DNA from: Macrostomum lignano
Taxonomy: Eukaryota
DNA length: 40,813 nt
Assembly (NCBI GenBank): GCA_002269645.1
Contig: NIVC01003662.1
Location: 1-40,813, forward strand
Direction of reading: 5' to 3'
Shown: positions 8,213-30,915 of the stretch, piece after piece
Position numbering within the stretch: the first letter of the stretch is position 1
How the letters are laid out: every line of letters starts with the position of its first letter
The notes under the pieces: generated by a model
Told to the model about the DNA's origin: nothing
The model's input: only the letters and a program-made list of their open reading frames with translations
Databases searched by the model: none
Made by a program: the position numbers and the translations under genes

Positions 8213-9541
8213 ATGGCTGTCGAAGGGATGAAGTTGCTTGCAATATTGCTTCTGTTCTGTTCGATCCTGGCAAAGGAATGCCTCGCCAAGCGGAGAGACT
8301 ATCAAGCCGAGCTGTTCAAATACTTGAAGAACAACATTACTGACTACAGTCCGAAACTGCGACCTACGCTCGACCCAGACCAGGAGGTAGAAGTACACGT
8401 CATCGCCTCACCAGGAATGATTGTATCCGTGGACAGTGCCAAGCAGAGCATGACAATAGCTGGTATGTTTTTTGCCAGCTGGTACGAGGAGCGACTGGTC
8501 TGGGACCCCCGGCTTTTCGGAAATGTCACCGCGATGGACTGGGACGGCAACCAGCTCTGGTTCCCGGTCATATTTGTCTACAACGGCATGGGAGACAATC
8601 AACTACTCAGTCCTCAGTTTCCGCCGTACATCACTTCCGTGCAGTCCAATTTGTCTGTGGTATCGACAACCTGGAGACAGGAGTGGGAGTTCTCTTGCGA
8701 GTTTAATATGACCCGCTTCCCTCTGGACCGTCACATCTGCGACATGGAGCTGTTCATGAATTCCCGCGAATCGGACAAAATCGTCCTAAGAAAAGGCTTA
8801 TTATTGGCAAACTCATCCTTTGAATACAACGAAGGCGTGGCTTTTGCTCGTAACAGCGAATGGCGGGTGCTGAACCTCAGCACATTCATACGGTACAACG
8901 ACTTCAAAATGTTCAAAAATCTGCCGCCAGTGAAAATGCCGAACTTCGTGATGCGACTGGAGATTGAGCGAGTGTCCACTTACTACATGCTCAACGTGGT
9001 GACTCCCCTAATGCTGCTCACGCTGCTCCAGGTGCTCGTCTTCTTCGTGCCCGTCGAGTCTGGAGAGAAGCTGGGCTTCGGCATCACCATCATGCTGAGC
9101 TACACGGTGTTCCTGCTGCTGCTGGACGGCCTGCTGCCCAAGTCGCAGTCGATGCCGGCCGTGGCGTCGTTCATCACGGCGGCCATGGTGCTGTCGACGT
9201 CGTCTCTGCTGCTGACGTCGGTGTCGATTCGGTTCCACTTCGCTGCGGAGTCTCAGCCGATGCCGTCGTGTCTCCGGGTCGTGTTCGTGAGCTGCCTGGG
9301 CCGCGTGATGCTGTGCGGTGAGCGGCGAGGCGGCAGCAGGACGGCACCGGAGGGAGACCTCGATGATTCTGCTGTGAACAAACCGAGCCGTGACGATGTG
9401 AGGACCGGAGAGACGTCCGGAGAGCCGAGGCGCTCGGAGTGGCAGGTCGCAGAGGTCGCCGTGGAGCGGCTGCTGATCCTCCTAGGCTGTCCGGTCACTT
9501 TGGCCATCACGTTTTGTTTCCTTATTTTTCCGTTTCTTTGA
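8213..9541 (+). CDS. Atypical nicotinic-type Cys-loop ligand-gated cation channel subunit (gene 1), intronless, 442 aa
   Basis: Signal peptide, Cys-loop CEFNMTRFPLDRHIC (C-x13-C), M2 SGEKLGFGITIMLSYTVFLLLL, and EWQVAEVAVERL before M4. No loop-C CC. An alternative ATG lies at 8228. Confidence 0.95.
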   Translation: MAVEGMKLLAILLLFCSILAKECLAKRRDYQAELFKYLKNNITDYSPKLRPTLDPDQEVEVHVIASPGMIVSVDSAKQSMTIAGMFFASWYEERLVWDPRLFGNVTAMDWDGNQLWFPVIFVYNGMGDNQLLSPQFPPYITSVQSNLSVVSTTWRQEWEFSCEFNMTRFPLDRHICDMELFMNSRESDKIVLRKGLLLANSSFEYNEGVAFARNSEWRVLNLSTFIRYNDFKMFKNLPPVKMPNFVMRLEIERVSTYYMLNVVTPLMLLTLLQVLVFFVPVESGEKLGFGITIMLSYTVFLLLLDGLLPKSQSMPAVASFITAAMVLSTSSLLLTSVSIRFHFAAESQPMPSCLRVVFVSCLGRVMLCGERRGGSRTAPEGDLDDSAVNKPSRDDVRTGETSGEPRRSEWQVAEVAVERLLILLGCPVTLAITFCFLIFPFL

Positions 9542-10009
9542 AAAAACATTCGGTGGCACCTTCACGGAGATGGGTTTTCTGATGGGTTAAAAATTCTCGT
9601 GTCTGACGAGAGTTTCGATATCTAAGCACCAAATTAACTTTGAAGATGATACGAAAACATTTTAATAGTATAATAAAGTCGGTTACTAATATATAGTTGC
9701 ACTGAGTGAGGTGAAGAGTAAGTATCACGCTTCGACGTCACTAGTAAATTTTTTGGCGAACTGAATGTATACATGTATACGGACACTGTACTAAAAAATT
9801 ATGATTGCTCTTTTCTAGGCCAAGTTTTCATATGGTAAGACCCTCTTGGCACAGCGCAAAAAGCTTAAAAAGATCAGAATAAACAACTTTTCTATGCATT
9901 GCCGCTATCCAATAAGATTCTTTTAAGTTTTCGATTAAAGCTTGTCAAAAAACGCATGCTTGCTTCAGGTGTTATTTATAATATAAAGTAGTACAATCAT
10001 ATAATGATA

Positions 10010-10288
10010 GATAAAACCTGCCCTAATGGGCAGATTTGCAACCGACAGCTCAGCCGCAGCTATTGCGTGTCGCATCTGAAGGCTGCGTACGGCTGTTCAG
10101 TCCGAGGACTGGGGGGGGGGGTTCATACACACCCTCAATTACCCCCAGCTAATGCTGGCACCCATTTTACAGCTGGGTGAACTGAAGCGTGTCAGTGTCT
10201 TGCTCGAGGACACAAATTGTTCCAAGAGGGTCGAGAATCGAACCCCAGACCTTTCAGTCGTGAGTCCGACGCTCTGACCACTAGGCTA
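10010..10288 (-). mobile_element. tRNA-derived SINE with CORE/Meta-like central domain
   Basis: The minus strand shows A box TAGCCTAGTGG, B box GGTTCGATTCT, then GTGTCCTCGAGCAAGACACT...CACCCAGCTGTAAAATGGGT, which resembles conserved SINE central domains. The 3' boundary is approximate. Confidence 0.75.
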
Positions 10289-11196
10289 GATTTAACTACA
10301 TCCAATAATAAGACAGTTCAGATGACGCAAGTGCAGGAAGGTTCCGTGGGAATCGGCCAGAATTGCAAGTCTGAAAACGGCGCAGTATTATTTGATGCAA
10401 ACATTTTGAAGGGACTGCGTGCGGAAAACTTATTATAAATCACGCATGGGTTTCATCATATATTCTTTACCTTTTCATCCATATACATGTGAAAAATACT
10501 TGCTTGCTGTTATTTATTTTAAGTTACGCGTCCTAAAGCGCGTCTGCTGCCCCTTGAGGATCAAGGGAAAGACTGAGCACTACCGTGACTTATTGATATG
10601 TAATGTTTAAGGGTCTTTGACCTTAACTATGTATATAAGCTAGGACACAATGGATCAATGGTACAAGCTAAAATTAAATTGGGCATTAGTTATTATTATA
10701 CGCTATCGTATCTCAGATGAATCACATGTAAGTTCTTAGTTTGCGGCCGATTAGAAACTTATAGCTGCATTTAGTCATTCTACATTAGATGTCCACACGC
10801 TCCTCGAGCGAGCTTTATCCAGAGGCAAATATCAGCAGAGGAGCTGCGTAGAATCCGCAAATATCAGTCATACCTGGCAAAGTCAATTTAGAAAATGAAT
10901 CGCAAATAATACTAATTTTCTGATGAGACGAAAGTCACACAATGAGATATACCTGGCTCAGTGCTGCATCAGATTAATTACGAGATACTCAGTGACTGCA
11001 ATTCACAGATGCTCGTAGCAACTAAATAGGCAGACTATGCAAACTTCAGAATTTGATAGCCTACTGCAGTGTCAACATGTAAAACGCATTTACGCTTGTA
11101 TAGCTTAAAGGCTCGGGTTCAACAGGATCTGGGGATTTTATTGTCCAAGCTTAGCACGCTGCTCATCATTGAGACGGCTAACTCAACTACATCCAC

Positions 11197-12497
11197 ATGC
11201 CACAGTTCAGCCTTACCCGCTTCTGTTTGGTCTTCAGCGCCATCGCTAGTGTTCAGGCGGCTCAGGCTAGAGACTTTGAAGCGGAATTGCTCGATTACTT
11301 GAAGACTAACAACTCTCGGCATAGCCGTGCGCTCAGGCCGAAACTAGATCCACATCAGGTGATTGAAGTGTCGCTCGGTGCTTGTCTGCTGAAAATTCTG
11401 GACGTAGACAGCGCCAAGCAGAGGGTCACCATAGCCGCAACGGTCTACGCGATGTGGTTTGATGAACGCTTCGTCTGGGACCCGACCCAGTTTGGGAACA
11501 TCACAATATTGGAATGGGACAACCAGAAAATCTGGTTTCCTCCAATCGTTATTCTGAATGGTCTCGGCGACAATCAGCTGCTGAAGCCGGAGTTTCCATC
11601 ATTTTTGGCCTCGATGTCATCGAACAAGACATTGGTGTCGACTATTTGGCGACCAGATTTCGAGTTCACCTGCCAATTAAGCATGTACCGATTTCCAATG
11701 GATCGACACGTATGCAATTTTAGTTTGTATATGGAGGACCAGGCTCAGCTATACAAAAGTATCGTTCCAAGCAAGAAATTTTTGTGGAATGCGGAGAATG
11801 AGCAAGATGTGGAGTTAAATGAAATTGGTGCGTATAAAAACAGCAGCGAGTGGCGACTGCTAAGTTTGAGTACTTCGGTAGAATATGGACTTGTCAACTT
11901 TTTTAAGAATTCACCACTGATGCTAATACCAGCCTACAATATGCAAATGGAAATCGAGCGAGTGTCCACTTACTACATGCTACTACTGCACTACTGCTGC
12001 TCACGCTGCTCCAGGTGCTCGTCTTCTTCGTGCCAGTCGAGTCTGGAGAGAAGCTTGGCTTCGGCATCACCATCATGCTGAGCTACACGGTGTTCCTGCT
12101 GCTGCTGGACGGCCTGCTGCCCAAGTCGCAGTCGATGCCGGCCGTGGCGTCGTTCATCACGGCGGCCATGGTGCTGTCGACGTCGTCTCTGCTGCTGACG
12201 TCGGTAGCGATTCGGTTCCACTTCGCTGCGGAGTCTCAGCCGATGCCGTTGTGTCTCCGGGTCGTGTTCGTGAGCTGCCTGGGCCGCGTGATGCTGTGCG
12301 GTGAGCGGCGAGGCGGCAGCAGGACGGCGCCGGAGGGAGACGCCGATGACTCCGTGGTGAGCAAGGCGAGCGACGTCGGTGAAAGGCGCTCGGAGTGGCA
12401 GGTCGCAGCGGTCGCCGTGGAGCGGCTGATGATTTTCTTGGGCTGTCCTGCCGCAGTGGCCATTGTGGTTGCATTTGTCATTGTTCTATCCTGTTAA
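11197..12497 (+). pseudogene. Cys-loop receptor gene 2 with a net 7-nt deletion at the ECD/M1 junction; yields a 294-aa ECD-only ORF (11197-12081)
   Basis: Signal peptide and Cys-loop CQLSMYRFPMDRHVC. The M1-M4 region is intact in another frame (12015-12497). The lesion at 11982-11988 is seen by alignment with gene 1. Confidence 0.88.
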
Positions 12498-13040
12498 TTT
12501 TAACTCGGCTAGACAAAAAATCGAAGCACAGTGATAGAGCGCTCTGTAGTAATATGAACTTATTAAACGTAATTTAAAAAAGCAGTCTCTCTTGTCTAAT
12601 AGTTATTCTCTTTTACGTTCTCTAAGAAATGCCTCGCTGCTGAAGCCTTGGGGTCCAAAATTAAAGGTCACATTTGCTTAAACTATTTACACTAATGGGC
12701 AATGCTTAAAATACAAAATCCAACTTTAAAATCGACGTGGTCGCATTCGCTCTGAATGCACCAATTTTATCCTTTTTGTGAATCTTTGTGGTCTAATTTA
12801 TTTTTTAACCTCTTTTGCGACTAAGGGCTCGGTACTCCAAAACTGAGGCTGTTTTTACTTTATGTACCGGTATGGAAAAGCTTGAGTTTACACGGCACCT
12901 ACGGATTCAGAACGGCGAGTTGGAGACTGTCACCAATTGGGACATCCCAAATCTGAAGCGATCACTGATTTGACTTCTGCAACTTTAACTTTCAGAAACT
13001 TTTAGGCTGCACCTTCGTCCCGCATACTGCCGTCCGGGGC

Positions 13041-13047
13041 TATAAAA
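13041..13047 (+). promoter_or_regulatory. TATA-like element (TATAAAA) immediately upstream of the 23-nt repeat module
   Basis: GGGC-TATAAAA-GGC consensus match only; no transcript evidence. Confidence 0.25.
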
Positions 13048-13055
13048 GGCACACA

Positions 13056-13320
13056 GTGAGGACCAAGGGTTTATTGGGCTGAGGACCATGGGTTCATGAG
13101 AATGAGATCCATGGGTTCAATGAGCTGAGGACCATGATTTCATGAGACTGAGGACCATGAATTCATGAGACTGAGGACCATGATTTCATGAGACCGAGGA
13201 CTATGAATTCATGAGACTGAGGACCATGATTTCATGAGACTGAGGACCATGATTTCATGAGACTGAAAACAATGGGTTCATTGGGCAGAAGAACAAGGCT
13301 TCGTTGTGCTGAAGACCAAT
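13056..13320. repeat. 23-nt tandem repeat (CATGAGACTGAGGACCATGA-ATT/TTT), related to the array at 1-300
   Basis: Shares the CTGAGGACCATG core and the period with the first array. A further degenerate patch lies at about 13530-13590. Confidence 0.88.
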
Positions 13321-14601
13321 GATGTCGTAGCGTGGGGCATGTGTCGCGTTTCTGGGGCGTTTGGTGCTGGTATGAGGTTTCGTTTGATTGGTATTTAGTT
13401 GGCGTGGGGGCTGCTCTCTTATTACTTGCAGCTTGCTTCACTTGCATCTCGCCACGCCAGTTGGGTGAGAGTCTATTTATAACCTTTCTATCGCTTTCTA
13501 TCGCTAACAGAGACAGTGACAGTTCATTAGGTTAGAGACCATGATTTTATTTGTGCTGAGGATCATGGCTTCATGAGACTGGGGATCATGGTGTGGTGGC
13601 GTGTGTCGCTGTTTGCATATACAAAATGTCCTCTACTCGTTGACAGCGAACCTCGACAGCAAAACTGCTATTCCAGTGTGCCGCTTAGAATTTCGGACGA
13701 AACAATTGCATCTAGGTCGTATTTTGGCACCCCGAATAGCTTTTTGCTTTTCTTCCAGCTTTCCAATCTAAAGCAATAATAAATCCACAGTCACAGGCTC
13801 AGAGCGATAGCTAATGCATCCGCAAACACTGGATGAAAGCAAATTATTGTCATAAAAATCTCGAAGTAGTCACTGACCTAGAGTAAATACCTGAGCTATG
13901 TTTACACAGATATGTAAACACGAACACTTGAGTTCAGACCAATGGAATATCTTTGAATCATTTTTTAGGATAAATATAGCTATCTGGATTGATATCCGCC
14001 AGTCAAAGCCAATGGATTATATGGCTCTGGTTCCAGTGCTGTCCGTTCAAACAAAACCCATCACAGGCAGGCTGGTCGCAAAGAAATTTGTTCTACACAG
14101 TGACCTGGCGCTGTTTGCCCTGTGCATTAGCCTAATTGCATTTCGGAGGAGTGTATTTACAAATAGGACTATAGAAACGTATGATTATTAGTGTCCAAAT
14201 ACCAAGTTTTCGGACAAAGCAAAGTTTGTCACGGTATAGATTGGAGTGCTTTCAGTTCCAGGCGTTCAATAAAGTCTTTTTCAGGAAAATCGAGTGTTTA
14301 GTTTATTTCTAATCCAGTTATTAATGTTTGTGATTAAGTGAATAATTAATCTGTCAAATATCTTGTGTGTCCTCTAACGAATGTTTATCAATCTGCCGTG
14401 TTACTCACATTGCCAGTAGTTTATCCAATTACCGCATTAGCAGTTTCATGCTGCAGCATAAATCTGATTAGCTTCAGCCAATAACTACTCACCAGGGAAG
14501 TGAAAAAGCAGCCGAACTCTAAAAAAAGATGAGCCTGCTCACATAAAACCTGCGATTCACCAACCGGAGTTCACTGCTTACTGGTCTCAAATAAGAGCGA
14601 A

Positions 14602-15924
14602 ATGCTGTGTAAAATATTCATTAAAGCTCTTGCTCTTGTCGCCTTGCTGACCACTGAATATCAGTTAGCAGCAGGTGCTGAAGACTACGAGGCCGAACTG
14701 TTGCACTACTTAAGGCACAACATCACCGGCTACAGCCCGACTCTCCGACCATTGCTGAATTCAAAGCAGACTGTCTTTGTGTCAGCAGACATTATAATTG
14801 GTCAGATAATCTTGGTTGACAGCTCAAAGCAGAGTGTAACAATTTCCGCAATTATCTCAGCCAGCTGGAGCAACGAGCGGTTAATCTGGGACCCGGCCAA
14901 GTTCGGCAACATCACCGTGATGGACTGGGACAGCAGTCAGCTCTGGTTCCCTGTTGTGGTCGTCTACAACGGCCTTGGAGACAACCAGCTGCTGAGTCCT
15001 CAGCTTCCGACATTCATCACGTCAGTGTCGCCCAACAGATCTACAGTGTCCACCGGCTGGATCGGGCAGTGGGAGTTCTCCTGCAAGTTTAACATAAATC
15101 GGTTTCCGTTCGATCGGCACTCCTGCGAGATGGAGCTGTTTGCGAATGACCAGAGCCGCGGGTTGCCCAGCACTGTTATAAAGAAAGGGGTCATTTCTAC
15201 TGATGCGCCATCGGAGCCAACGGAGTACAACAATAAGGGTGCCTATAGGACCAATGGCGAATGGAACTTGGTCAACTTGACCACTTATATAAAGAAAATA
15301 CCCTATGAGGTGCTTAAGGGAGCATCAAAGGTTAATCTGTCTACGTTGGCTTTGCACATGGAGCTCGAGCGAGTGCCCACTTACTACATTTTGAGCGTAA
15401 TGACCCCCCTGCTGCTGCTCACGCTGCTCCAGGTGCTCGTCTTCTTCGTTCCCGTTGAGTCTGGAGAGAAGCTGGGCTTCGGCATCACAATCATGCTGAG
15501 CTACACGGTGTTTCTGCTGCTGCTGGACGGCCTGCTGCCCAAGTCGCAGTCGATGCCGGCCGTGGCGTCGTTCATCACGGCGGCCATGGTGCTGTCGACG
15601 TCGTCTCTGCTGCTGACGTCGGTGTCGATTCGGTTCCACTTCGCTGCGGAGTCTCAGCCGATGCCGTCGTGTCTCCGGTTCGTGTTTGTGAGCTGCCTGG
15701 GCCGCGCGATGCTGTGCGGAGTCAAGCGACGAGGTGGCAGCAGGACGGCGCCGGAGCGAAACCCCAACGACTCCGTGCTAAGCAAAGCGAGCAGCGACGG
15801 CGAGAGGCGCTCGGACTGGAAAGCAGCTTCAACCGCCGTGGAGCGGTGCATGATTGTCGTAGGCTTGCCAATCACCGCAGCGCTTTTGATCGCTTTGGTC
15901 GCGGTTCCTTTTGCTGAATTTTGA
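14602..15924 (+). CDS. Atypical Cys-loop receptor subunit (gene 3), intronless, 440 aa
   Basis: Signal peptide, Cys-loop CKFNINRFPFDRHSC, the shared M1-M3 cassette, and DWKAASTAVERC before M4. Confidence 0.95.
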   Translation: MLCKIFIKALALVALLTTEYQLAAGAEDYEAELLHYLRHNITGYSPTLRPLLNSKQTVFVSADIIIGQIILVDSSKQSVTISAIISASWSNERLIWDPAKFGNITVMDWDSSQLWFPVVVVYNGLGDNQLLSPQLPTFITSVSPNRSTVSTGWIGQWEFSCKFNINRFPFDRHSCEMELFANDQSRGLPSTVIKKGVISTDAPSEPTEYNNKGAYRTNGEWNLVNLTTYIKKIPYEVLKGASKVNLSTLALHMELERVPTYYILSVMTPLLLLTLLQVLVFFVPVESGEKLGFGITIMLSYTVFLLLLDGLLPKSQSMPAVASFITAAMVLSTSSLLLTSVSIRFHFAAESQPMPSCLRFVFVSCLGRAMLCGVKRRGGSRTAPERNPNDSVLSKASSDGERRSDWKAASTAVERCMIVVGLPITAALLIALVAVPFAEF

Positions 15925-16520: not shown

Positions 16521-17210
16521 TGTGAAGTTTCGGTCTTGTGAAGTTTCGGTCTTGTGAAGTTTCGGTCTTGTGAAGTTTCGGTCTTGTGAAGTTTCGGTCT
16601 TGTGAAGTTTCGGTCTTGTGAAGTTTCGGTCTTGTGAAGTTTCGGTCTTGTGAAGTTTCGGTCTTGTGAAGTTTCGGTCTTGTGAAGTTTCGGTCTTGTG
16701 AAGTTTCGGTCTTGTGAAGTTTCGGTCTTGTGAAGTTTCGGTCTTGTGAAGTTTCGGTCTTGTGAAGTTTCGGTCTTGTGAAGTTTCGGTCTTGTGAAGT
16801 TTCGGTCTTGTGAAGTTTCGGTCTTGTGAAGTTTCGGTCTTGTGAAGTTTCGGTCTTGTGAAGTTTCGGTCTTGTGAAGTTTCGGTCTTGTGAAGTTTCG
16901 GTCTTGTGAAGTTTCGGTCTTGTGAAGTTTCGGTCTTGTGAAGTTTCGGTCTTGTGGAGTTTCGGTCTTGTGAAGTTTCGGTCTTGTGAAGTTTCGGTCT
17001 TGTGAAGTTTCGGTCTTGTGAAGTTTCGGTCTTGTGAAGTTTCGGTCTTGTGAAGTTTCGGTCTTGTGAAGTTTCGGTCTTGTGAAGTTTCGGTCTTGTG
17101 AAGTTTCGGTCTTGGGAAGTTTCGGTCTTGTGAAGTTTCGGTCTTGTGAAGTTTCGGTCTTGTGAGTTTCGGTCTTGTGAAGTTTCAGTCTTGTGAAGTT
17201 TCGGTCTTGT
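16521..17210. repeat. 16-nt minisatellite (TGTGAAGTTTCGGTCT), about 43 copies
   Basis: Nearly homogeneous units; the array explains the 250-aa periodic ORF 16470-17222. Confidence 0.97.
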
Positions 17211-17710: not shown

Positions 17711-18535
17711 GCCCACCGAGAGACAGTGCCGCACACCGAGAGACAGTGCCGCACACCGAGAGACAGTGCCGCACACCGAGAGACAGTGCCGCACACCGAG
17801 AGACAGTGCCGCACACCGAGAGACAGTGCCGCACACCGAGAGACAGTGCCGCACACCGAGAGAAAGTGCCGCACACCGAGAGACAGTGCCGCACACCGAG
17901 AGAAAGTGCCGCACACCGAGAGACAGTGCCGCACACCGAGAGACAGTGCCGCACACCGAGAGACAGTGCCGCACACCGAGAGACAGTGCCGCACACCGAG
18001 AGACAGTGCCGCACACCGAGAGACAGTGGCGCACACCGAGAGACAGTGCCGCACACCGAGAGACAGTGCCGCACACCGAGAGACAGTGCCGCACACCGAG
18101 AGAAAGTGCTGCACACCGAGAGACAGTGCCGCACACCGAGAGAAAGTGCCGCACACCGAGAGACAGTGCCGCACACCGAGAGAAAGTGCCGCACACCGAG
18201 AGACAGTGGCGCACACCGAGAGACAGTGGCGCACACCGAGAGACAGTGGCGCACACCGAGAGAAAGTGCCGCACACCGAGAGACAGTGGCGCACACCGAG
18301 AGAAAGTGGCGCACACTAAGAGACAGTGGCGCACACCGAGAGACAGTGGCGCACACTAAGAGACAGTGGCGCACACCGAGAGACAGTGGCGCACACTAAG
18401 AGACAGTGCCGCACACCAAGAGACAGTGCCGCACACCGAGAGAAAGTGCCGCACACCGAGAGACAGTGCCGCACACCGAGAGACAGTGGCGCACACTAAG
18501 AGACAGTGGCGCACACCGAGAGACAGTGGCGCACA
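17711..18535. repeat. 20-nt minisatellite (GCACACCGAGAGACAGTGCC), about 41 copies
   Basis: Read directly; it has no stop codons in any frame, which produces six periodic ORFs. Confidence 0.97.
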
Positions 18536-19110: not shown

Positions 19111-20430
19111 CAGGGTTCGGCAAACTCCGGCTCGAGGACCGCATACAGCTTGCGAAGCATCCGGCCCTCGGGTCCTTTGAAACTTGACAAGCAATTCGGT
19201 CCCGCTCAAGGTTTGTGTCGCTTTGCAGCTCTCCTCTAATAATCTCTTCTCTGTAATAAATCTCTTATCTGTAACAAATGTCTTCTCTATTAAGTCTCCT
19301 TTCTAATAATCTTTTCTCTCTAATAATCTCTTCTCTCTAATAATCTCTTCTCTCTAATAATCTCTTCTCTCCAATAATCTCTTCTCTCTAATAATCTCTT
19401 CTCTCTAATCATCTCTTCTCTCTAATAATCTCTTCTCTCTAATAATCTCTTCTCTCTAATAAATCTCTTATCTGTAACAAATCTCTTCTCTATTAAGTCT
19501 CCTCTCTAATAATCTTTTCTCTCTAATAATCTCTTCTCTCTAATAATCTCTTCTCTCTAATAATCTCTTTTCTCTAATAATCTCTTCTCTCTAATAATCT
19601 CTTCTCTCTAATAATCTCTTCTCTCTAATAATCTCTTTTCTCTAATAATCTCTTCTCTCTAATAATCTCTTTTCTCTAATAATCTCTTCTCTCTAAAAAA
19701 TCTCTTGTCTGTAACAAATCTCTTCTCTATTAAGTCTCCTCTCTAATAATCTCTTCTCTCTAATAATCTCTTTTCTCTAATAATCTCTTTTCTCTAATAA
19801 TCTCTTTTCTCTAAAAAATCTCTTGTCTGTAACAAATCTCTTCTCTATTAAGTCTCCTCTCTAATAATCTTTTCTCTCTAATAATCTCTTTTCTCTAATA
19901 ATCTCTTCTCTCTAATAATCTCTTTTCTCTAATAATCTCTTCTCTCTAATAATCTCTTCTCTCTAATAATCTCTTCTCTCTAATAATCTCTTCTCTCTAA
20001 TAATCTCTTCTCTCTAATAATCTCTTCTCTCTAATAATCTCTTCTCTCTAATAATCTCTTCTCTCTAATAATCTCTTCTCTCTAATAATCTCTTTTCTCT
20101 AATAATCTCTTCTCTCTAATAAATCTCTTATCTGTAACAAATCTCTTCTCTATAAAGTCTCCTCTCTAAAAATCTTTTCTCTTCCTTCTCTCCTCTTCAC
20201 TTCTTTCACTTCTCTTCCCCTCTCGCTTTTCTCCTCTCTCTTCTCTCTCCTCTCTCGTCTCTACTCTCTCCTCTCTCCTCTCTCGTCTCTCGTCTCTACT
20301 CTCTACTATCTTGCCTCCTCTTTTCCTCTGACCCTCTTCCCTATCCCCTCCTCTATCCGGCAGTCATGCACTATGACTAAATTCTCTATCTACATGTAGC
20401 CCTTGAGGCAAAAAAGTTTTCCAACCCCTG
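19111..20430. mobile_element. hAT (Buster/Charlie-like) non-autonomous element filled with a CT-rich minisatellite
   Basis: Imperfect TIRs CAGGGTTCGGCAAACT and AGTTTTCCAACCCCTG (13/16 match). The 8-bp flanks CTTCAAAA and CTTTAGAA match at 6/8, and the right flank fits nnnTAnnn. Confidence 0.7.
19236..20356. repeat. 17-nt minisatellite (TAATAATCTCTTCTCTC) with a recurring interrupting block, followed by a polypyrimidine tract (20161-20356)
   Basis: Read directly. The block AAATCTCTT(A/G)TCTGTAACAAAT recurs five times. Confidence 0.93.
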
Positions 20431-21099: not shown

Positions 21100-22431
21100 A
21101 TGAATACGCCCTGGCAACTACGGCCTGCCGCGCTCCTTCTGCTGACGTTTGCGTTTGGCGGAATCCAACAGGCTCAGTCGAGAGGCTTTGAAGCTGAACT
21201 GCTCAAGTATCTGAAAAACAACATCACCGATTTCAGCCGAACACTTCGACCAAACATCAATCCCGAGAAGGTAGTTGAAGTGTCAATAATGGCGTTTCCT
21301 TTCCAAATTGTGTCAGTGAACAGCGTTAAACAAAGCATGACAATAAACATAATTTTGCAACTCAGCTGGTTCAATGAGCATCTGGTTTGGGATCCTGCGA
21401 AATTCGGACGTCTGTCTGTCATAGAATGGGAAAACCAGCAGATTTGGACTCCTCCGATTGTGATTTTTAATGGCATCGGTCAAAACCAGTTCCCCGTGCT
21501 TCGGTTCCCTTTGCACTTATTATCAACTACTAGAAACCTTTCAATAGTGGCCACCTCCTGGAGAGATGAAGTGGAATTCTCTTGCAAGCTCGACATGCGC
21601 CGTTTTCCATTTGACCGACACAGCTGCGATATGGAGCTGTACATGGAGGACCAAGCCCACATGTACAATTCAATAGTTCCTACAGTTAAAAATCTGTGGA
21701 ATGAATCAAAAGAATTCAATGAAAAAAGTGCCTACCAAGAGAGCAGTGAGTGGAGAATGTTGAACTTGAGCACAAGTGTACACACGCGACAGTTTCAAAC
21801 ATTCAAAAACTCGCCGCCGACTCTTTTACCGATCTACACGGTTCACATGGAGATCGAGCGGGTGTCGACTTACTATGTGTTGAATGTATTGACTCCCCTG
21901 CTGCTGCTCACGCTGCTCCAGGTGCTCGTCTTCTTCGTGCCCGTCGAGTCTGGAGAGAAGCTGGGCTTCGGCATCACCATCATGCTGAGCTACACGGTGT
22001 TCCTGCTGCTGCTGGACGGCCTGCTGCCCAAGTCGCAGTCGATGCCGGCCGTGGCGTCGTTCATCACGGCGGCCATGGTGCTGTCGACGTCGTCTCTGCT
22101 GCTGACGTCGGTGTCGATTCGGTTCCACTTCGCTGCGGAGTCTCAGCCGATGCCGTCGTGTCTTCGGTTCGTGTTCGTGAGCTGCCTGGGCCGCGTGATG
22201 CTGTGCGGTGAGAGGCGAGGCGGCAGCAGGACGGCGCCTGAGGAAGACGCCGACGACGCCGCGGTGAGCAAAGCGGGCCATGAAGACGAGAGGCCCGTAG
22301 AGACCTCCGGAGACCCGAGGCGCTCGGAGTGGCAGGTCGCAGCGGTCGCTGTGGAACGGCTGATGATTTTCTTGGGCTGTCCGACTGCAGGGGCCATTTT
22401 GGTTGCATTCGTCATTGTTCCTGTGCTGTGA
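21100..22431 (+). CDS. Atypical Cys-loop receptor subunit (gene 4), intronless, 443 aa
   Basis: Signal peptide, Cys-loop CKLDMRRFPFDRHSC, the shared M1-M3 cassette, and EWQVAAVAVERL. Confidence 0.95.
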   Translation: MNTPWQLRPAALLLLTFAFGGIQQAQSRGFEAELLKYLKNNITDFSRTLRPNINPEKVVEVSIMAFPFQIVSVNSVKQSMTINIILQLSWFNEHLVWDPAKFGRLSVIEWENQQIWTPPIVIFNGIGQNQFPVLRFPLHLLSTTRNLSIVATSWRDEVEFSCKLDMRRFPFDRHSCDMELYMEDQAHMYNSIVPTVKNLWNESKEFNEKSAYQESSEWRMLNLSTSVHTRQFQTFKNSPPTLLPIYTVHMEIERVSTYYVLNVLTPLLLLTLLQVLVFFVPVESGEKLGFGITIMLSYTVFLLLLDGLLPKSQSMPAVASFITAAMVLSTSSLLLTSVSIRFHFAAESQPMPSCLRFVFVSCLGRVMLCGERRGGSRTAPEEDADDAAVSKAGHEDERPVETSGDPRRSEWQVAAVAVERLMIFLGCPTAGAILVAFVIVPVL

Positions 22432-23451: not shown

Positions 23452-24754
23452 TTATTCGACGAAGGGCAGAACCAGAAACGCAAAAAAATGGCGACAATCG
23501 CCACGCAGCCCACGACGGCTATCAGCCGCTCCACGGCGGTTGAAGCTGTTTTCCAGTCCGAGCGCCTCTCGCCGTCGTCGCCCGCCTTTCTCACCACAGC
23601 GTCGTCGGCGTCTTCCTCAGGCGCCGTCCTGCTGCCGCCTCGCCTCTCACCGCACAGCATCACGCGGCCCAGGCAGCTCACAAACACGAACCGAAGACAC
23701 GACGGCATCGGCTGAGACTCCGCAGCGAAGTGGAACCGAATCGCCACCGACGTCAGCAGCAGAGACGACGTCGACAGCACCATGGCCGCCGTGATGAACG
23801 ACGCCACGGCCGGCATCGACTGCGACTTGGGCAGCAGGCCGTCCAGCAGCAGCAGGAACACCGTATAGCTCAGCATGATGGTGATGCCGAAGCCCAGCTT
23901 CTCTCCGGACTCGACGGGAACGAAGAAGACGAGCACCTGGAGCAGCGTGAGCAGCAGCAGGGGAGTCACCACATTCAACACATAGTAAGTGGACACCCGC
24001 TCGATCTCCAGTCGTACCACGTAGGTCGGCAGTTTCATTTTCGGTTGTCCCTTGAAAACCGCATATTCTTTGTAGCGCACGAACGTGCTCAAGTTCAGCA
24101 GATTCCATTCGCTGTTCCTAACATAGGCCCCCACTTCATTGAATTCCACTGATGGGCCATACTGAAGGCTGCCCTTTTTTACAGCAGGTTGTCCTTTCCC
24201 CGCCCCTGGTCGTTAGCGAACAGCTCCAAGTCGCAGGTGTGCCGATCGAACGGGAACCGACGCATGTCGAATTCGCAGGAGAACTCCCATTCACGCCTCC
24301 AGATGGCTGATACCACTGACTTGTCTGGTGCCACGGATGTGATGAACGGCGGAAACTGTGGACTTAGCAGCTGGTTGTCTCCGATGCCATTGTACACAAA
24401 TATCACAGGAAAGTAGATCTTGCCGATCTCCCAATCCATCACGGTGATGTTGCCAAACTCCTTAGGATCCCAGACCAGTCTTTCCTCATACCAAGTTGCA
24501 AACATCAGGGCAGTAATTTTAATACTCTGCTGTACGCTGTCCACCATCACAATCTGACCCATCACGGTGGACAAGTAGACGCTCATTGACTGACTGTCCA
24601 AGGCTGGTCGCAGAGTCGGGCTGTAGTCCGTGATGTTGTTTTCCAGATACTTCAGCAAAGCCGCTTCGAAATCTTGCTTAGGCATCTTGGAGTAGCAGCT
24701 GGTCAGCTGGGTTGCGATGGCAACAAAAAATAATAATTTGCTGAGTCCTAACAT
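23452..24754 (-). CDS. Atypical Cys-loop receptor subunit (gene 5); two apparent 1-nt deletions in homopolymers; 434 aa if corrected
   Basis: ATG at 24754 (MLGLSKLL...) and Cys-loop CEFDMRRFPFDRHTC. One added base in the C-run at 24198-24201 joins the two ORFs. One added base in the A-run at 23482-23488 restores a paralogue-like end, IFFAFLVLPFVE*, with the stop at 23452-23454. The gene could be a pseudogene or the shifts could be assembly errors. Confidence 0.82.
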
Positions 24755-26239: not shown

Positions 26240-26490
26240 GTAGTAGGTAAAGTAGGTAGGTAGGTACTAGCTACTTGTTGTAACAGCAGTACAGTGACAG
26301 TTGTAACAGCTCAGCCTTGGACACTTCATTGTCACAACAGTTCTGGAGCATCCTCCTTAAGATGTGTGTACACTTGTTTGTGAGGAAGCCAACCACTCGA
26401 GTATTTGTTCCATGTATACAAAATAGCAACCTCCATGGCCTTGCCTATAGATAGAGAATTCTTTCTCCAGACCATCCAATTGAAAGTCAC
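26240..26490 (-). mobile_element. Decayed P-element/THAP9-like transposase exon
   Basis: After a splice-acceptor-like TCCTTTTCAG the frame reads DFQLDGLEKEFSIYRQGHGGCYFVYMEQILE. From memory, this resembles the QxDxLExxFxxxRQxxGxxY C-terminal catalytic motif of P-type transposases; not verified by search. Confidence 0.5.
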
Positions 26491-27620: not shown

Positions 27621-28315
27621 CACACCCATTAGGGCCTAGCATCCATTAGGGCCTAGCACCCATTAGGGCCTAGCACCCATTAGGGCCTAACACCCATTAG
27701 GGCCTAACACCCATTAGGGCCTAACACCCATTAGGGCCTAACACCCATAAGGGCAGCTAACACCTATTAGGGCCAAACACCCATTAGGGCCTAACACCCA
27801 TTAGGGCCTAACACCCATTAGGGCCTAACCCCCATTAGGGCCTAACACCCATAAGGGCAGCTAACACCTATTAGGGCCTAACACCCATTAGGGCCTAGCA
27901 CCCATTAGGGCCTAGCACCCATTAGGGCCTAGCACCCATTAGGGCCTAACACCCATTAGGGCCTAACACCCATTAGGGCCTAACACCCATTAGGGCCTAG
28001 CACCCATTAGGGCCTAACACCCATTAGGGCCTAACACCCATTAGGGCCAAACACCCATTAGGGCCTAACACCCATTAGGACCTAACACCCATTAGGGCCT
28101 AGGCACCCATTAGGGCCTAAACACCCATAAGGGCAGCTAACACCTATTAGGGCCAAACACCCATTAGGGCCTAACACCCATTAGGGCCTAACACCCATTA
28201 GGGCCTAACACCCATTAGGGCCTAACACCCATTAGGGCCTAACACCCATTAGGGCCTAACACCCATTAGGGCCTAACACCCATTAGGGCCTAACACCCAT
28301 TAGGGCCTAACACCC
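27621..28315. repeat. 17-nt minisatellite (ACACCCATTAGGGCCTA), about 41 copies, with recurring variant units
   Basis: Read directly. The variant ACACCCATAAGGGCAGCTAACACCT occurs three times. Confidence 0.96.
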
Positions 28316-28508
28316 AGAGTACATGTCTGACGATTAGAAAGTCTGTGCCGCTGTACACGAGTCTAACATAAAGGCTAACTAAGCCGCTCTAACAATAGGA
28401 AAAACTTGAAAATGTACATTTAGTTACGTTTAAATAAAGTAAAAAGTACAATTTAACAGAAGCGTTGACTATCTGTACGACTGCAAATATTATTGCTTGT
28501 TAGTAATG

Positions 28509-29273
28509 TACGAGGGGTGTACCAGAAGTAGTGTCACTTTTGCTTGCTTCCACAAGTATTAATGTGTGTTTAAAAAATCATATGCCCTAAAAGTTAGCAG
28601 CTTATTTTAGCTTTCATGCCACGAAAGTCCGATATTTACAGTATAAGTGCTTCCTGCTGTAAGCAGCATGCATTTGTTCGCATACCCTTAGCCATAGAAA
28701 TACACACCGCATAGTGCTTCTATGCTCACTCAGAACAAAGCCACAAGTACAGCTGATCAAGCACAGAGGTGCAAGACAGCAGCTGCAAGATTTGTTCCAG
28801 TCATGGACCCTAACATTCACTCTACAGAAGGGGAGACATGCAATTTTTACACTTTGGAGTCTTGGTCTGAAATGCCCTGAAATTCGCGAAAACTTGACCC
28901 GCATTCACGGTCCCGATTCCATCAGTTGACGAACAGTTTACAGGTGGATCGAACAGTTTGAGGCTGGCTGTAGATATCAAAGGCCAACCACCTTTGGGTA
29001 AGTTGGCAAAACATACTGCCGGTCAGCCTCGAGCTGGTGTCTTACAACTCTGTGCTTAATCAGCTCTACTTGTGGCTTTCTTCTGAGTGAGCATAGAAGC
29101 ACTATGCGGTGTGTATTTCTATGGCTAAGGGTATGCGAACAAATGCATGCTGCTTACAGCAGGAAGCACTTATAAATATCGGACTTTCGTGGCATGAAGG
29201 CTAAAATAAGCCGCTAACTTTTAAGGCATATGATTTTTTAACACACATTACGTCGTAATACACCTTTTCACGT
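28509..29273 (+). mobile_element. Mariner-derived foldback element: 5' TIR, N-terminal HTH fragment and an inverted copy of its 5' region
   Basis: Starts TA-CGAGGGGTGTACCAGAAGTA. Encodes MDPNI...RHAIFTLWSLGLKCPEIRENLTRIHGPDSIS*RTVYRWIEQFEAG, a mariner HTH-like sequence. Inverted arms lie at about 28560-28785 and 29032-29250. Confidence 0.82.
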
Positions 29274-29300
29274 TCAATTTTGATCAATGTCCAGTTCTAA

Positions 29301-29436
29301 AAAAACTAGCGGAAATTCAATTCAGATTGAATATGATTTTGTGTATGGCTAAACCCTACTTCGGTTAGAATGTTTTGAGCTGGGGTTAGACTGGGCCCCA
29401 GTCTAAATTGTCTGAATTGAATTTCCGCTAGTTTTT
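29301..29436. repeat. Small inverted-repeat element (MITE-like) with perfect 26-bp arms and an internal hairpin
   Basis: AAAAACTAGCGGAAATTCAATTCAGA (29301-29326) is the reverse complement of 29411-29436. An internal TAGACTGGG-C-CCCAGTCTA hairpin lies at about 29387-29405. Confidence 0.75.
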
Positions 29437-29589
29437 CCGCTAGAAGCCACAACAGCACAAGATGTCCTACCGAAAGAAGGTTGCGAGGCGTACAAAAGGC
29501 GAGTTGAAGACCTAGGAACAGAGGAGAACGTTATCAATCTTAGTTTTTATGTCTAGTTCGATCAACTTATTGAAAAACCTGTTGCAAAT

Positions 29590-30915
29590 TCAGTCAACGA
29601 AAGGCCGAACCAGGAACACGCAGAAGATAGCGACGGTGGCCACGCAACCCACGACGGCCATCAGCCGCTCCACAGCGACCGCTGCGACCTGCCACTCCGA
29701 GCGCCTCGGGTCTCCGGAGGTCTCTACAGGCTTCTCGCCGTCATCCCCGCTCGCCTTGCTCACGTTGTCGGCGTCTCCCTCTGGCGCCGTCCTGCTGCCG
29801 CCTCGCCGCTCACCGCACAGCAGCGCGCGGCCCAGGCAGCTCACGAACACGAACCGAAGACACGACGGCATCGGCTGAGACTCCGCAGCGAAGTGGAACC
29901 GAATCGCCACCGACGTCAGCAGCAGAGACGACGTCGACAGCACCATGGCCGCCGTGATGAACGACGCCACGGCCGGCATCGACTGCGACTTGGGCAGCAG
30001 GCCGTCCAGCAGCAGCAGGAACACCGTATAGCTCAGCATGATGGTGATGCCGAAGCCCAGCTTCTCTCCGGACTCGACGGGCACGAAGAAGACGAGCACC
30101 TGGAGCAGCGTGAGCAGCAGCAGGGGAGTCACCACGTTGAGCATGTAGTAAGCGGACACTCGCTCGATCTCCAGTCGCACCACGTAGGTCGGCAGCGGCA
30201 TTTTCGGTAGTTCTTTGAAAACTTTATAAAAGCGGAAGTGCACGAAGGTGCTCACATTTAGTATTCGCCATTCACTGTTTTCTCTATAGGCAGACAACTC
30301 ATTGTATTGCAGACCCTGTGCGAGCATGTTGCCCTTGTGCGGCATCACCAGCTCGTTTCCGCGGCCCATGTCGTACATGTAGAGCTCCAAGTCACAGGTG
30401 TGCTGATCGAACGGGAACTGCCTCATGTCGAACTCGCAGGAAAACTCCCAGCTCCGTTTCCAACTAGCGCTTACTACGGTGGAATTCGGTGACACGGAAG
30501 TCAGGAATGTGGGAATCTGGGGCTTCATCAGCTGATTGTCGCCGATACCATTGTACACAAAAATGATGGGGAACCAGATCTGGCTGGTGCCCCAGTCCAC
30601 GACCGACACTCCCCCGAACTCGGACGCGTCCCACACCAGGCGCTGCTCCTCCCAGGTGGCCAGGAGCAATGCGGAAATCTTGAAGCTCTGGCTGGCGCTG
30701 TCAACATACACAATTTGATTCACCATGACGGCCACAGAGATGTTCACAACCTCCGTGTGGTTAAGTCTTGGTCTGACCATCGGATGATAGTCGGTAATGT
30801 TGTTCTTCAAGTACTTCATGAGCTCGATTTGTGGATCAGATGCGTTGCACAGTGGCAGAGCAGCAACGAGAGCCACTGCTGGCAAAAGCAGCAGGTCCAC
30901 TCTTGGATGAAGCAT
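29590..30915 (-). CDS. Atypical Cys-loop receptor subunit (gene 6), intronless, 441 aa
   Basis: The first ATG is at 30915 (the ORF track begins at a TTG, 30927). Signal peptide, Cys-loop CEFDMRQFPFDQHTC, shared cassette, and EWQVAAVAVERL. Confidence 0.95.
   Translation of the reverse strand: MLHPRVDLLLLPAVALVAALPLCNASDPQIELMKYLKNNITDYHPMVRPRLNHTEVVNISVAVMVNQIVYVDSASQSFKISALLLATWEEQRLVWDASEFGGVSVVDWGTSQIWFPIIFVYNGIGDNQLMKPQIPTFLTSVSPNSTVVSASWKRSWEFSCEFDMRQFPFDQHTCDLELYMYDMGRGNELVMPHKGNMLAQGLQYNELSAYRENSEWRILNVSTFVHFRFYKVFKELPKMPLPTYVVRLEIERVSAYYMLNVVTPLLLLTLLQVLVFFVPVESGEKLGFGITIMLSYTVFLLLLDGLLPKSQSMPAVASFITAAMVLSTSSLLLTSVAIRFHFAAESQPMPSCLRFVFVSCLGRALLCGERRGGSRTAPEGDADNVSKASGDDGEKPVETSGDPRRSEWQVAAVAVERLMAVVGCVATVAIFCVFLVRPFVD

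What the first reader, a model, noticed from the sequence alone, without database searches (positions are those of the whole stretch)
8213..30915. Six-gene array of intronless nicotinic-like channels that cannot bind acetylcholine canonically: candidate chemoreceptor family
Seen, aligned by eye to vertebrate alpha7 recalled from memory. The loop-B Trp (W149 equivalent) is N/E/N/E/N/Y in genes 1-6. The loop-D Trp is M/T/I/I/L/L. The WxPD Asp is lost in all six. The loop-A Tyr is kept in genes 1, 3, 5 and 6 but is L/F in genes 2 and 4. Loop C has no vicinal CC and is about 4 residues longer. The Cys-loop, signal peptide and four TMs are intact, and the M3-M4 loop is very short. Established: octopus and squid chemotactile receptors are tandemly arrayed, divergent nAChR relatives that lost the ACh cage and sense environmental chemicals. 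Inference: this is an independent (or related) expansion used for chemosensation in another invertebrate.
Basis: partly seen in the sequence, partly recalled or inferred. Interest (0 to 1): 0.9.

Follow-up and report, generated by a model that had tools for sequence, protein, structure and literature searches.

The report
Flatworm orphan nicotinic-like channel gene array
Six tandem, intron-free copies (four intact, two frameshifted) of a nicotinic-receptor-like cation channel that has lost the acetylcholine-binding residues, from a clade so far seen only in Macrostomum flatworms; the pore-encoding part is kept almost identical between copies by gene conversion while the ligand-binding part has diverged, and a chemosensory role is plausible but untested.

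Summary
The window holds six single-ORF pentameric ligand-gated channel genes. One correction: only four copies are intact. Gene 2 has a 7-nt deletion in M1. Gene 5 has two 1-nt deletions in homopolymer runs.

The family is an isolated clade. Its only close relatives among 1.84 billion representative proteins are from the flatworm Macrostomum lignano (about 45-50% identity). M. lignano carries its own intronless tandem array. Everything else is at most 34% identical. Octopus chemotactile-receptor structures do not appear among the best sequence or fold matches, so this expansion looks independent of the cephalopod one.

The pore is of the cation type (GEK, 9' Leu).

One new finding: a 335-338-nt stretch encoding M1-M3 is 95-100% identical between copies, synonymous sites included (dS 0.04-0.14). 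In the extracellular domain synonymous sites are saturated. The M. lignano array lacks this pattern, so it reflects gene conversion rather than selection.

Intronless tandem nAChR-like expansions with lost ACh residues are already known in molluscs and annelids. This is a new member of that kind. A chemoreceptor function remains an inference.

The parts
8213..9541 (+). g1: intact single-exon pLGIC subunit gene, 442 aa. It has a signal peptide, extracellular domain (ECD), Cys-loop, M1-M4 and a short intracellular loop.
   Evidence: ORF. Pfam LBD 1.4e-25 and TM 3.8e-18. Best PDB sequence match is muscle nAChR alpha at 1.6e-32.
11197..12497 (+). g2: disrupted copy. A 7-nt deletion at 11981/11982 (start of M1) shifts the frame. 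Frame 1 stops at 12081, and the rest of the protein continues in frame 3 from 12015.
14602..15924 (+). g3: intact copy, 440 aa
21100..22431 (+). g4: intact copy, 443 aa. Its ECD is sister to that of g2.
   Evidence: g2+g4 bootstrap 295/300.
23452..24754 (-). g5: disrupted copy. One 1-nt deletion lies at the A-run 24175-24181 and gives a premature TAA at 24181-24179. A second lies in the T7 run 23482-23488, in M4. It is either a pseudogene or the product of homopolymer assembly errors.
29590..30915 (-). g6: intact copy, 441 aa from the ATG at 30915. In window coordinates: Cys-loop 30394-30438, M1 30088-30156, M2 29998-30066, M3 29893-29976, M4 29596-29697.
   Evidence: AlphaFold2 model with pLDDT 75.9. 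Coordinates.
9014..9348 (+). Homogenised pore module (end of M1 to just after M3) in g1. This is a gene-conversion tract.
11997..12331 (+). Homogenised pore module in g2
15415..15752 (+). Homogenised pore module in g3
21904..22238 (+). Homogenised pore module in g4
23620..23954 (-). Homogenised pore module in g5
29783..30117 (-). Homogenised pore module in g6

Best explanation
The window carries a tandem array (four genes on +, two on -) of six intron-free paralogues of a nicotinic-receptor-like, cation-selective pentameric ligand-gated channel subunit. The subunit belongs to an orphan clade known so far only from macrostomid flatworms.

Shown:
- The proteins keep what is needed to fold, assemble, gate and conduct cations: signal peptide, Cys-loop with FPxD, M1-M4, the SGEK -1' Glu, and 9' Leu.
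- All members, including the M. lignano relatives, lack the loop-B and loop-D tryptophans, the loop-C vicinal cysteines and the WxPD aspartate. The loss of the ACh cage is therefore ancestral to the clade.
- The array evolves in mosaic fashion. The extracellular domains are old duplicates, with synonymous sites saturated and 39-59% amino-acid identity. They differ most in loops C, F, D and B.
- A 335-338-nt block encoding the end of M1 through M3 is kept 95-100% identical at the DNA level. Repeated gene conversion explains this, and the block's high GC3 fits GC-biased conversion.
- Two copies carry frameshifts, consistent with birth-and-death turnover.

Inferred:
- The subunits form homo- or heteropentamers with one common pore and different ligand-binding domains.
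- They are gated by something other than acetylcholine.
- The most likely role is detection of diverse small molecules. I put roughly 0.35 on external chemosensory cues, as with cephalopod chemotactile receptors, and a similar weight on internal transmitters or metabolites.
For: - Domain and fold: Pfam LBD plus TM in all copies. The best PDB sequence hits are nAChR alpha, beta and alpha7 at 1e-32 to 1e-26, ahead of 5-HT3 at 1e-22. The AlphaFold2 model matches nAChR structures with TM-scores of 0.61-0.81.
- Binding residues.
- Cation-type pore: the sequence SGEKLGFGITIMLSYTVFLLLLD. The GEK versus PAR rule is taken from PMC9874803.
- Clade restriction: only P0001/P0023 (M. lignano PAA92206.1), P0002, P0029 and P0038 are close. 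The next hits are at most 34% identical and taxonomically mixed.
- The M. lignano locus L001 has three intact single-ORF copies plus a fragment, in tandem.
- Monophyly of the ten family members is 300/300. Monophyly of the six window genes on the ECD alone is 239/300.
- Conversion, by dS: ECD pS is 0.63-0.86, against core dS of 0.04-0.14.
- Conversion, by codon use: at amino-acid-invariant degenerate codons, all six genes share the codon at 3 of 37 ECD columns and 87 of 103 core columns (Fisher p = 6e-17). The M. lignano trio shows 0.45 versus 0.58 pairwise codon identity. Cross-species values are 0.44 versus 0.50.
- GC3 is 0.86-0.91 in the tract and 0.51-0.72 in the ECD.
- The paralogues share no flank homology.
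- ECD dN/dS is about 0.2 where it can be estimated, so the ECDs are under constraint.
Against: - No expression, ligand or electrophysiology data exist for any member, so function is inferred from anatomy and analogy.
- Two of the six copies are disrupted.
- The trees are neighbour-joining on very divergent sequences, not maximum likelihood.
- Cephalopod CR sequences could not be obtained for a direct joint tree.
- dS in the ECD is saturated, so dN/dS there is only approximate and positive selection on the pocket could not be tested.
- Higher variability of loops C and F is common to pLGICs in general.
- The loop-B position is polar or acidic (N/E) in five copies, unlike the very hydrophobic pocket reported for octopus CRT1.
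- Short-read polishing of a long-read assembly can artificially homogenise similar paralogous segments. Paralogue-specific synonymous variants survive inside the tract, which argues against this but does not exclude some inflation.
Confidence: 0.75

Rival explanations
1. True chemosensory receptors. The channels are expressed in peripheral sensory cells of the flatworm and gated by environmental chemicals, a convergent counterpart of the octopus and squid chemotactile receptors.
For: - They share the genomic hallmarks of CRs and of chemoreceptor families in general: intronless genes, a tandem array, lineage-specific expansion, pseudogenes, a conserved pore and a divergent ligand-binding domain (PMC11526382).
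- The ACh cage is lost.
- The pore is of the cation type.
Against: - No expression or ligand data exist.
- The family is small: six copies here, and three intact copies plus a fragment in the one 21-kb M. lignano locus read.
- The pocket is not uniformly hydrophobic; the loop-B position is N/E.
- Similar orphan nAChR-like proteins such as Alpo4 remain without a sensory role (PMC10338036).
Confidence: 0.35
2. Internal transmitter- or metabolite-gated channels. The subunits form synaptic or extrasynaptic receptors for another endogenous small molecule, such as an amine, betaine, choline, protons or a metal ion.
For: - pLGICs have repeatedly switched ligands. The nematode DEG-3 choline receptor appears among the PDB hits, and ZAC is discussed in PMC11536092.
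- An acidic residue at the loop-B position in g2 and g4 would suit a cationic ligand.
- The ECD is under purifying constraint, with dN/dS about 0.2.
Against: The ECDs of the paralogues are only 39-59% identical, and the expansions appear species-specific. That is more turnover than is usual for transmitter receptors.
Confidence: 0.3
3. Non-binding structural or accessory subunits that co-assemble with canonical ACh-binding alpha subunits, as vertebrate beta1, beta3 or alpha5 do.
For: - Loop C lacks Cys-Cys, as in non-alpha subunits.
- The identical TM modules would fit a common assembly partner.
Against: - Complementary-face determinants are lost too, including the loop-D Trp.
- The whole clade is very distant from canonical subunits (NJ distance at least 1.6).
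- It has a remodelled beta5-beta6 region and loop-F insertions.
Confidence: 0.1
4. The near-identity of the pore module is not gene conversion. It would instead reflect purifying selection plus codon bias, or an assembly or polishing artefact.
For: - The M1-M2 amino-acid sequence is also highly conserved in M. lignano.
- GC3 is high in the tract.
- Multi-copy segments are prone to consensus polishing.
Against: - With the same amino acids conserved, M. lignano paralogues share codons at only 0.58, and cross-species pairs at 0.50, against 0.93 within the window.
- Paralogue-specific and subgroup-specific synonymous variants persist inside the tract.
- The shoulders show patchwork sharing between different gene pairs: g4/g5 and g4/g6 with 0 of 2000 permutations reaching the observed run, g2/g4 with 3 of 2000.
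Confidence: 0.07

Closest known systems
Macrostomum lignano uncharacterised Neur_chan proteins (PAA92206.1 / A0A267H1R5; A0A1I8GG98; UniParc UPI0007A21CAE, UPI0007A18BAA) and their tandem array on NIVC01000059.1
   Same: - They belong to the same clade (family bootstrap 300/300).
- They show the same loss of the ACh cage.
- They share family motifs: NNIT, VD(S/T)AKQ, WRxEFEFxC, and an SGEKLGFGITIMLSYTVFLLLLDG M2.
- They are also intronless and tandemly arrayed.
   Different: - They are only 31-47% identical in the ECD.
- The M. lignano array does not show strong synonymous-site homogenisation of M1-M3.
- Only one of its three intact copies is annotated.
- No function is known.
Cephalopod chemotactile receptors (CRs, e.g. 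octopus CRT1)
   Same: - They are nAChR-derived cation channels that no longer bind ACh.
- They are intronless with lineage-specific expansion.
- They combine a conserved pore architecture with a diversified ligand pocket (PMC11526382, PMC13174522, bioRxiv 10.1101/2025.10.28.685082).
   Different: - The window family comes from a different phylum.
- No specific sequence or fold affinity was found. CRT1 structures are absent from the best 60 sequence matches and the best 50 fold matches, which are all vertebrate or Torpedo nAChRs.
- CRs have a markedly hydrophobic pocket, whereas the loop-B position here is N/E/Y.
- Sensory expression and ligands are demonstrated for CRs and unknown here.
Expanded intronless tandem nAChR-like genes of molluscs and annelids (Jiao et al. 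2019, PMC6896357) and orphan Alpo4 of Alvinella (PMC10338036)
   Same: - They are lophotrochozoan, lineage-specific, intron-poor tandem arrays of divergent nAChR-like genes.
- Many lack the loop-C Cys-Cys or other ACh residues.
- Their ligands are unknown.
   Different: - Flatworms were not part of those surveys.
- Alpo4 keeps the aromatic residues (loop-B and loop-D Trp), which this family has lost.
- No report of a conversion tract confined to the pore turned up in my searches.
Schistosome nAChR, ACC and 'Cys-less' LGICs (PMC9874803)
   Same: They are flatworm pLGICs. The GEK motif here matches the cation-type nAChR class.
   Different: The window family has an intact Cys-loop, so it is not 'Cys-less'. 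It has GEK rather than PAR, so it is not an ACC. No neodermatan sequence was found close to the family in the exhaustive search.

Membership tests
Pentameric ligand-gated ion channel (Cys-loop receptor) superfamily | N-terminal ligand-binding domain (PF02931) followed by a four-helix transmembrane domain (PF02932) | tested here: met
   All six copies score above the Pfam gathering cut-offs. The AF2 model shows a beta-sandwich plus M1-M4.
Pentameric ligand-gated ion channel (Cys-loop receptor) superfamily | Cys-loop: two cysteines 13 residues apart enclosing F/YPxD | tested here: met
   For example g6 CEFDMRQFPFDQHTC. It is present in all six copies and in the M. lignano members.
Pentameric ligand-gated ion channel (Cys-loop receptor) superfamily | Fold similarity to solved pLGIC structures | tested here: met
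   Foldseek E-values from 1.1e-26 to about 2e-24 and TM-scores of 0.61-0.81 against nAChR chains.
Acetylcholine-gated nicotinic receptor (functional nAChR) | Aromatic cage: loop-B Trp (W149), loop-D Trp (W55), loop-A Tyr, loop-C Tyr residues | tested here: not met
   Loop B is N/E/N/E/N/Y and loop D is M/T/I/I/L/L. Only the loop-A Tyr is kept, in four of the six.
Acetylcholine-gated nicotinic receptor (functional nAChR) | Vicinal Cys-Cys at the tip of loop C (alpha-type subunits) | tested here: not met
   No CC in loop C of any copy.
Acetylcholine-gated nicotinic receptor (functional nAChR) | Cation-selectivity motif (G-E-K, -1' Glu) and 9' Leu gate | tested here: met
   SGEK followed by ...IMLS... 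in M2 of all copies. The rule is as described in PMC9874803.
Acetylcholine-gated nicotinic receptor (functional nAChR) | Currents evoked by acetylcholine | not testable with these tools
   Needs oocyte or HEK electrophysiology.
Cephalopod chemotactile receptors (CR) | nAChR-derived, ACh-binding residues replaced, intronless genes in expanded arrays | tested here: met
   features as described in PMC11526382 and PMC13174522.
Cephalopod chemotactile receptors (CR) | Phylogenetic membership of the CR (or molluscan CR-like) clade | tested here: inconclusive
   CR sequences could not be retrieved for a joint tree. Indirect evidence points against membership: the nearest relatives are only Macrostomum, all other proteins are at most 34% identical, and no CR structure is among the best PDB matches. 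The CR clade is reported as predominantly cephalopod (PMC13174522).
Cephalopod chemotactile receptors (CR) | Expression in peripheral sensory cells and activation by poorly soluble environmental molecules | not testable with these tools
   Needs in situ hybridisation or scRNA-seq, and electrophysiology.
Flatworm acetylcholine-gated chloride channels (ACC) | Anion-selectivity motif (PAR/PAK) before M2 | tested here: not met
   The family has SGEK instead (PMC9874803).

The most novel reading that the evidence does not exclude
A flatworm-specific family of ionotropic chemoreceptors that arose from nicotinic receptors independently of the cephalopod chemotactile receptors. It would evolve in modular fashion: one shared pore module kept uniform across paralogues by gene conversion, so that any combination of subunits can co-assemble and conduct alike, while the ligand-binding domains diversify freely.
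Probability: 0.3. Interest if true: 0.75.

Novelty: new member of a known kind. Interest (0 to 1): 0.45.

Why it matters
- If the family proves sensory, it would be a second, independent case of nicotinic receptors recruited as chemoreceptors. The relative that carries the family, M. lignano, is, to my knowledge, a transgenic laboratory model. That would make the question 'how do neurotransmitter receptors become chemoreceptors?' testable outside cephalopods.
- The pore-restricted conversion tract is a clear example of modular concerted evolution inside a channel gene. It also warns that trees built on full-length or TM sequences of such arrays will be misleading.
- If the family is not sensory, it is one more orphan lophotrochozoan nAChR-like clade.

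Tried and rejected
1. Exact look-ups of the window proteins in the contig and cluster collections found nothing. The source species could not be named.
2. I tried to identify the species from transposon ORFs (LINE 6382-6876, gypsy RT 37316-37753). Neither had a hit in the 5.8-billion-protein database. This argues weakly against M. lignano itself but gives no name.
3. Rfam found nothing in the window.
4. I tried to obtain cephalopod CR sequences for a joint tree.
   - The key papers are not held.
   - CRT1 never appeared in the PDB top lists, even when queried with another Trp-less nAChR-like protein.
5. A GENECONV-style test on the longest identical run of variable sites is ill-suited here, because the tract is homogenised in all six genes at once. 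It was significant only for the shoulder patches g4/g5, g4/g6, g2/g4 and g2/g6. I replaced it with the synonymous-codon test, using M. lignano as the control.
6. Recent segmental duplication was rejected as the cause of the TM identity. The flanks share no similarity and ECD synonymous sites are saturated.
7. The long alternative-frame ORFs inside the TM region (for example 21750-22211 and 23647-24108) were dismissed as by-products of GC-rich codons.
8. No paper mentions the M. lignano gene id, and none describes pore-restricted conversion in pLGIC arrays.

Full report
**What is in the window**

A six-frame ORF scan and a tblastn of two of the proteins back onto the window find exactly six copies of one gene. 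They are g1 8213-9541 (+), g2 11197-12497 (+), g3 14602-15924 (+), g4 21100-22431 (+), g5 23452-24754 (-) and g6 29590-30915 (-). No further fragments are present. Every copy matches Pfam Neur_chan_LBD and Neur_chan_memb above the curated cut-offs. Each coding sequence is one uninterrupted stretch, so the genes are intronless within the CDS.

The best solved-structure relatives by sequence are muscle and neuronal nicotinic receptor subunits (E about 1e-32 to 1e-26), ahead of 5-HT3A (1e-22). An AlphaFold2 model of g6 (mean pLDDT 75.9) has the expected beta-sandwich, M1-M3, a short post-M3 helix and a long MA-M4 helix. Its 50 best Foldseek matches in the PDB are all vertebrate or Torpedo nAChR chains, with TM-scores of 0.61-0.81 and 19-26% identity.

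I aligned the six proteins with frog alpha1, fish alpha7a and beta2, and a hemichordate alpha7-like protein. The alignment reproduces each residue call (also visible in the HMMER alignment):
- The alpha7 W55 position (loop D) is M/T/I/I/L/L.
- The Asp of WxPD is V/P/V/P/V/I. In g5 the Trp of that motif is also Tyr.
- The loop-A Tyr is Y/L/Y/F/Y/Y.
- The loop-B Trp is N/E/N/E/N/Y.
- Loop C has no Cys-Cys and is about four residues longer than in alpha7.

The Cys-loop (C-x13-C with FPxD) is present in all six. In the g6 model the M3-M4 loop is about 65 residues, and it is 9 residues shorter in g2, g3 and g5.

- g2 has a 7-nt deletion at 11981/11982, at the start of M1. The frame then runs to a stop at 12081, and the rest of the protein continues in another frame.
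- g5 has lost one base at the A-run 24175-24181, which creates a TAA just after the Cys-loop.
- g5 has lost a second base in the T7 run 23482-23488, in M4.
- The g5 lesions lie in homopolymers and could be assembly errors. The g2 lesion is unlikely to be one.

**Where the family belongs**

A word-indexed search of 5.8 billion proteins found only a handful of close relatives, and so did an exhaustive HMMER scan of 1.84 billion cluster representatives. They are P0001/P0023 (50% identity), P0002 (46-49%), P0029 (a TM fragment, 60%) and P0038 (an ECD fragment, 40%). Below them there is a gap: every other protein is at most 34% identical.

The named relatives are Macrostomum lignano proteins (PAA92206.1, A0A1I8GG98). 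The unnamed ones carry neighbouring UniParc numbers.

The next-nearest proteins are a taxonomic mixture: amphioxus alpha10-like, a tubeworm protein, catfish alpha7 and brachiopod beta3-like. Their NJ distances are at least 1.6, against 0.7-0.85 to M. lignano.

The M. lignano gene lies in its own array. Locus L001 (NIVC01000059.1) has three intact single-ORF copies on one strand (7881-9188, 10001-11305, 12825-14105) plus an M3-M4 fragment. Only one of the three is annotated.

On the extracellular domain alone:
- the ten family members are monophyletic in 300 of 300 NJ bootstraps;
- the six window genes group together in 239 of 300;
- g2 and g4 are sisters in 295 of 300.

All M. lignano members also lack the loop-B and loop-D Trp and the loop-C Cys-Cys. 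The ACh cage was therefore lost before the two lineages split.

The source organism is therefore most likely a macrostomid-like flatworm. The window's proteins and its transposon ORFs are absent from the databases. That suggests a species other than M. lignano, but I could not name it.

**Pore and selectivity**

The M1-M2 linker and M2 read SGEKLGFGITIMLSYTVFLLLLD. This gives a -1' Glu, 6' Thr, 9' Leu and 13' Val, which is the cation-channel pattern. It is not the PAR/PAK pattern of anion-selective flatworm ACCs or GluCls (rule as summarised in PMC9874803). That these are cation channels is an inference from established structure-function knowledge, not a measurement.

Nucleotide identity between paralogues is about 45-70% over the extracellular domain. 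It jumps to 95-100% from the end of M1 to just past M3, then falls again. The contrast shows in four measures.

| Measure | Extracellular domain | M1-M3 core |
|---|---|---|
| Synonymous divergence | pS 0.63-0.86 (saturated) | dS 0.04-0.14 over 113 codons |
| Amino-acid-invariant degenerate columns where all six genes share the codon | 3 of 37 | 87 of 103 (Fisher p = 6e-17) |
| Pairwise codon identity at such columns, window genes | 0.47 | 0.93 |
| Same, M. lignano trio | 0.45 | 0.58 |
| Same, window versus M. lignano | 0.44 | 0.50 |
| GC3 | 0.51-0.72 | 0.86-0.91 |

The M. lignano array is the decisive control. It conserves much the same amino acids, yet its codons are not homogenised. Amino-acid constraint and codon bias therefore cannot explain the window pattern. 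The explanation is recent or ongoing gene conversion confined to a 335-338-nt block. The blocks are at 9014-9348, 11997-12331, 15415-15752, 21904-22238, 23620-23954 and 29783-30117.

Other observations fit this:
- The high GC3 of the tract is what GC-biased conversion predicts.
- The shoulders (pre-M1, the intracellular loop, MA-M4) show patchwork sharing between different gene pairs. These groupings conflict with the ECD tree.
- The flanks of the genes share no similarity, so recent segmental duplication is excluded.
- The disrupted g2 and g5 still carry the homogenised block, as expected for a mechanism that does not depend on function.

One caveat applies. Consensus polishing of multi-copy segments could inflate the identity. 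Paralogue-specific synonymous variants do survive inside the tract, which argues against a pure artefact.

**What it most likely does**

Shown:
- The family has a folded, assembly-competent, cation-type pLGIC architecture.
- It lacks the canonical ACh-binding determinants on both faces of the interface.
- Its extracellular domains are under constraint (dN/dS about 0.2 where estimable).
- Those domains are very different from one another (39-59% identity).
- The greatest variability lies in loops C, F, D and B. Mean column entropies are 1.93, 1.82, 1.67 and 1.61, against 1.35 for the rest of the domain and 1.01 for loop A.

Inferred:
- The subunits build pentamers with a common pore and different binding sites.
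- They are gated by ligands other than ACh.

Whether those ligands are environmental (chemoreception) or internal (transmitter or metabolite) cannot be decided from sequence.

In favour of chemoreception, the genomic syndrome matches that of the cephalopod CRs and many other chemoreceptor families: intronless genes, a tandem array, lineage-specific duplication, pseudogenes, and a conserved pore with a diversified ligand domain (PMC11526382). Against it:
- The family is small.
- The loop-B position is polar or acidic rather than hydrophobic.
- Comparable orphans such as Alpo4 have resisted assignment of a ligand or role (PMC10338036).

I put about 0.35 on the chemosensory reading.

**Comparison with what is known**

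Massive, largely intronless, tandemly arrayed expansions of nAChR-like genes are documented for molluscs and annelids (PMC6896357). A phylum-wide molluscan survey reports clades with substituted ligand-binding residues and places CRs as a predominantly cephalopod clade (PMC13174522). My searches found no such description for flatworms. The schistosome LGIC survey describes only nAChR, ACC, GluCl and Cys-less clades (PMC9874803).

The window family is not a member of the CR clade on the evidence available. It has no specific similarity to CRs, and CR structures are absent from the best sequence and fold matches. I could not run a joint tree because CR sequences were not obtainable here.

The family resembles CRs in its genomic and structural syndrome. 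Whether it also works as a chemoreceptor is untested, and it is not one of them.

**Verdict**

This is a real feature and the residue observations are correct, with two of the six genes disrupted. It is a new, macrostomid-restricted member of the known class of divergent lophotrochozoan nAChR-like orphan channels. The most distinctive result is the pore-restricted gene-conversion tract.

The chemoreceptor interpretation is reasonable but unproven. The general phenomenon is already known, so I score interest as moderate (0.45).

Noticed in passing
window 16521-17210, 17714-18535, 19234-20182, 27622-28316: Four long minisatellite arrays lie in the intergenic spaces of the channel array: 16 bp x 43, 20 bp x 41, 17 bp x 56 and 17 bp x 40 copies, at 86-98% matches. 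They generate the long repetitive pseudo-ORFs seen in all frames. The stretch around 19-21 kb also has strongly negative GC skew and low GC.
   Followed up: partly
window 1-275, 13079-13266, 4214-4598, 5006-5383: Shorter tandem arrays. The units at 1-275 and 13079-13266 share the motif CTGAGGACCA, so one satellite family occurs both outside and inside the gene array.
   Followed up: no
window 1589-2047 (-), 5791-6279 (+), 6382-6876 (+): Fragments of non-LTR retrotransposon reverse transcriptase (Pfam RVT_1, 1.3e-9 and 4e-19) lie upstream of g1. The 6382-6876 ORF has no relative in the 5.8-billion-protein database.
   Followed up: partly
window 36692-38047 (-), with direct repeats 35019-35335 and 36386-36704: A degraded LTR-retrotransposon pol: RVT_1 at 37316-37753 and an integrase H2C2 zinc finger at 36692-36976. 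Next to it is a roughly 320-bp direct repeat pair spaced 1.37 kb apart at 95-99% identity, possibly LTRs or a small tandem duplication. The RT ORF has no database relative.
   Followed up: partly
window 39552-39926 (-): An ORF with a THAP zinc-finger domain (Pfam 5.3e-8), probably derived from a transposase.
   Followed up: no
L001 7881-9188, 12825-14105, 16333-16674 (M. lignano NIVC01000059.1): Two intact family members and one M3-M4 fragment flank the single annotated M. lignano gene. They are not annotated as full genes in the NCBI record; one exists only as a 255-aa fragment prediction (P0038). The public annotation therefore under-counts this family.
   Followed up: yes
window g1-g6 (binding-loop residues): The copies fall into residue types that alternate along the array. 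g1, g3 and g5 have loop-A Tyr, loop-B Asn and WFPV (YFPV in g5). g2 and g4 have loop-A Leu/Phe, loop-B Glu and W(F/T)PP, and are ECD sisters (295/300). g6 has Tyr and Tyr. This hints at duplication of a two-gene unit, or at alpha/beta-like partner subunits.
   Followed up: partly
window 11960-12000: The g2 frameshift sits right at the 5' edge of the conversion tract and is a complex indel. About 19 nt are replaced by a 12-nt stretch containing the direct repeat ACTACTGC-ACTACTGC, which looks like a slippage or recombination-junction scar.
   Followed up: partly
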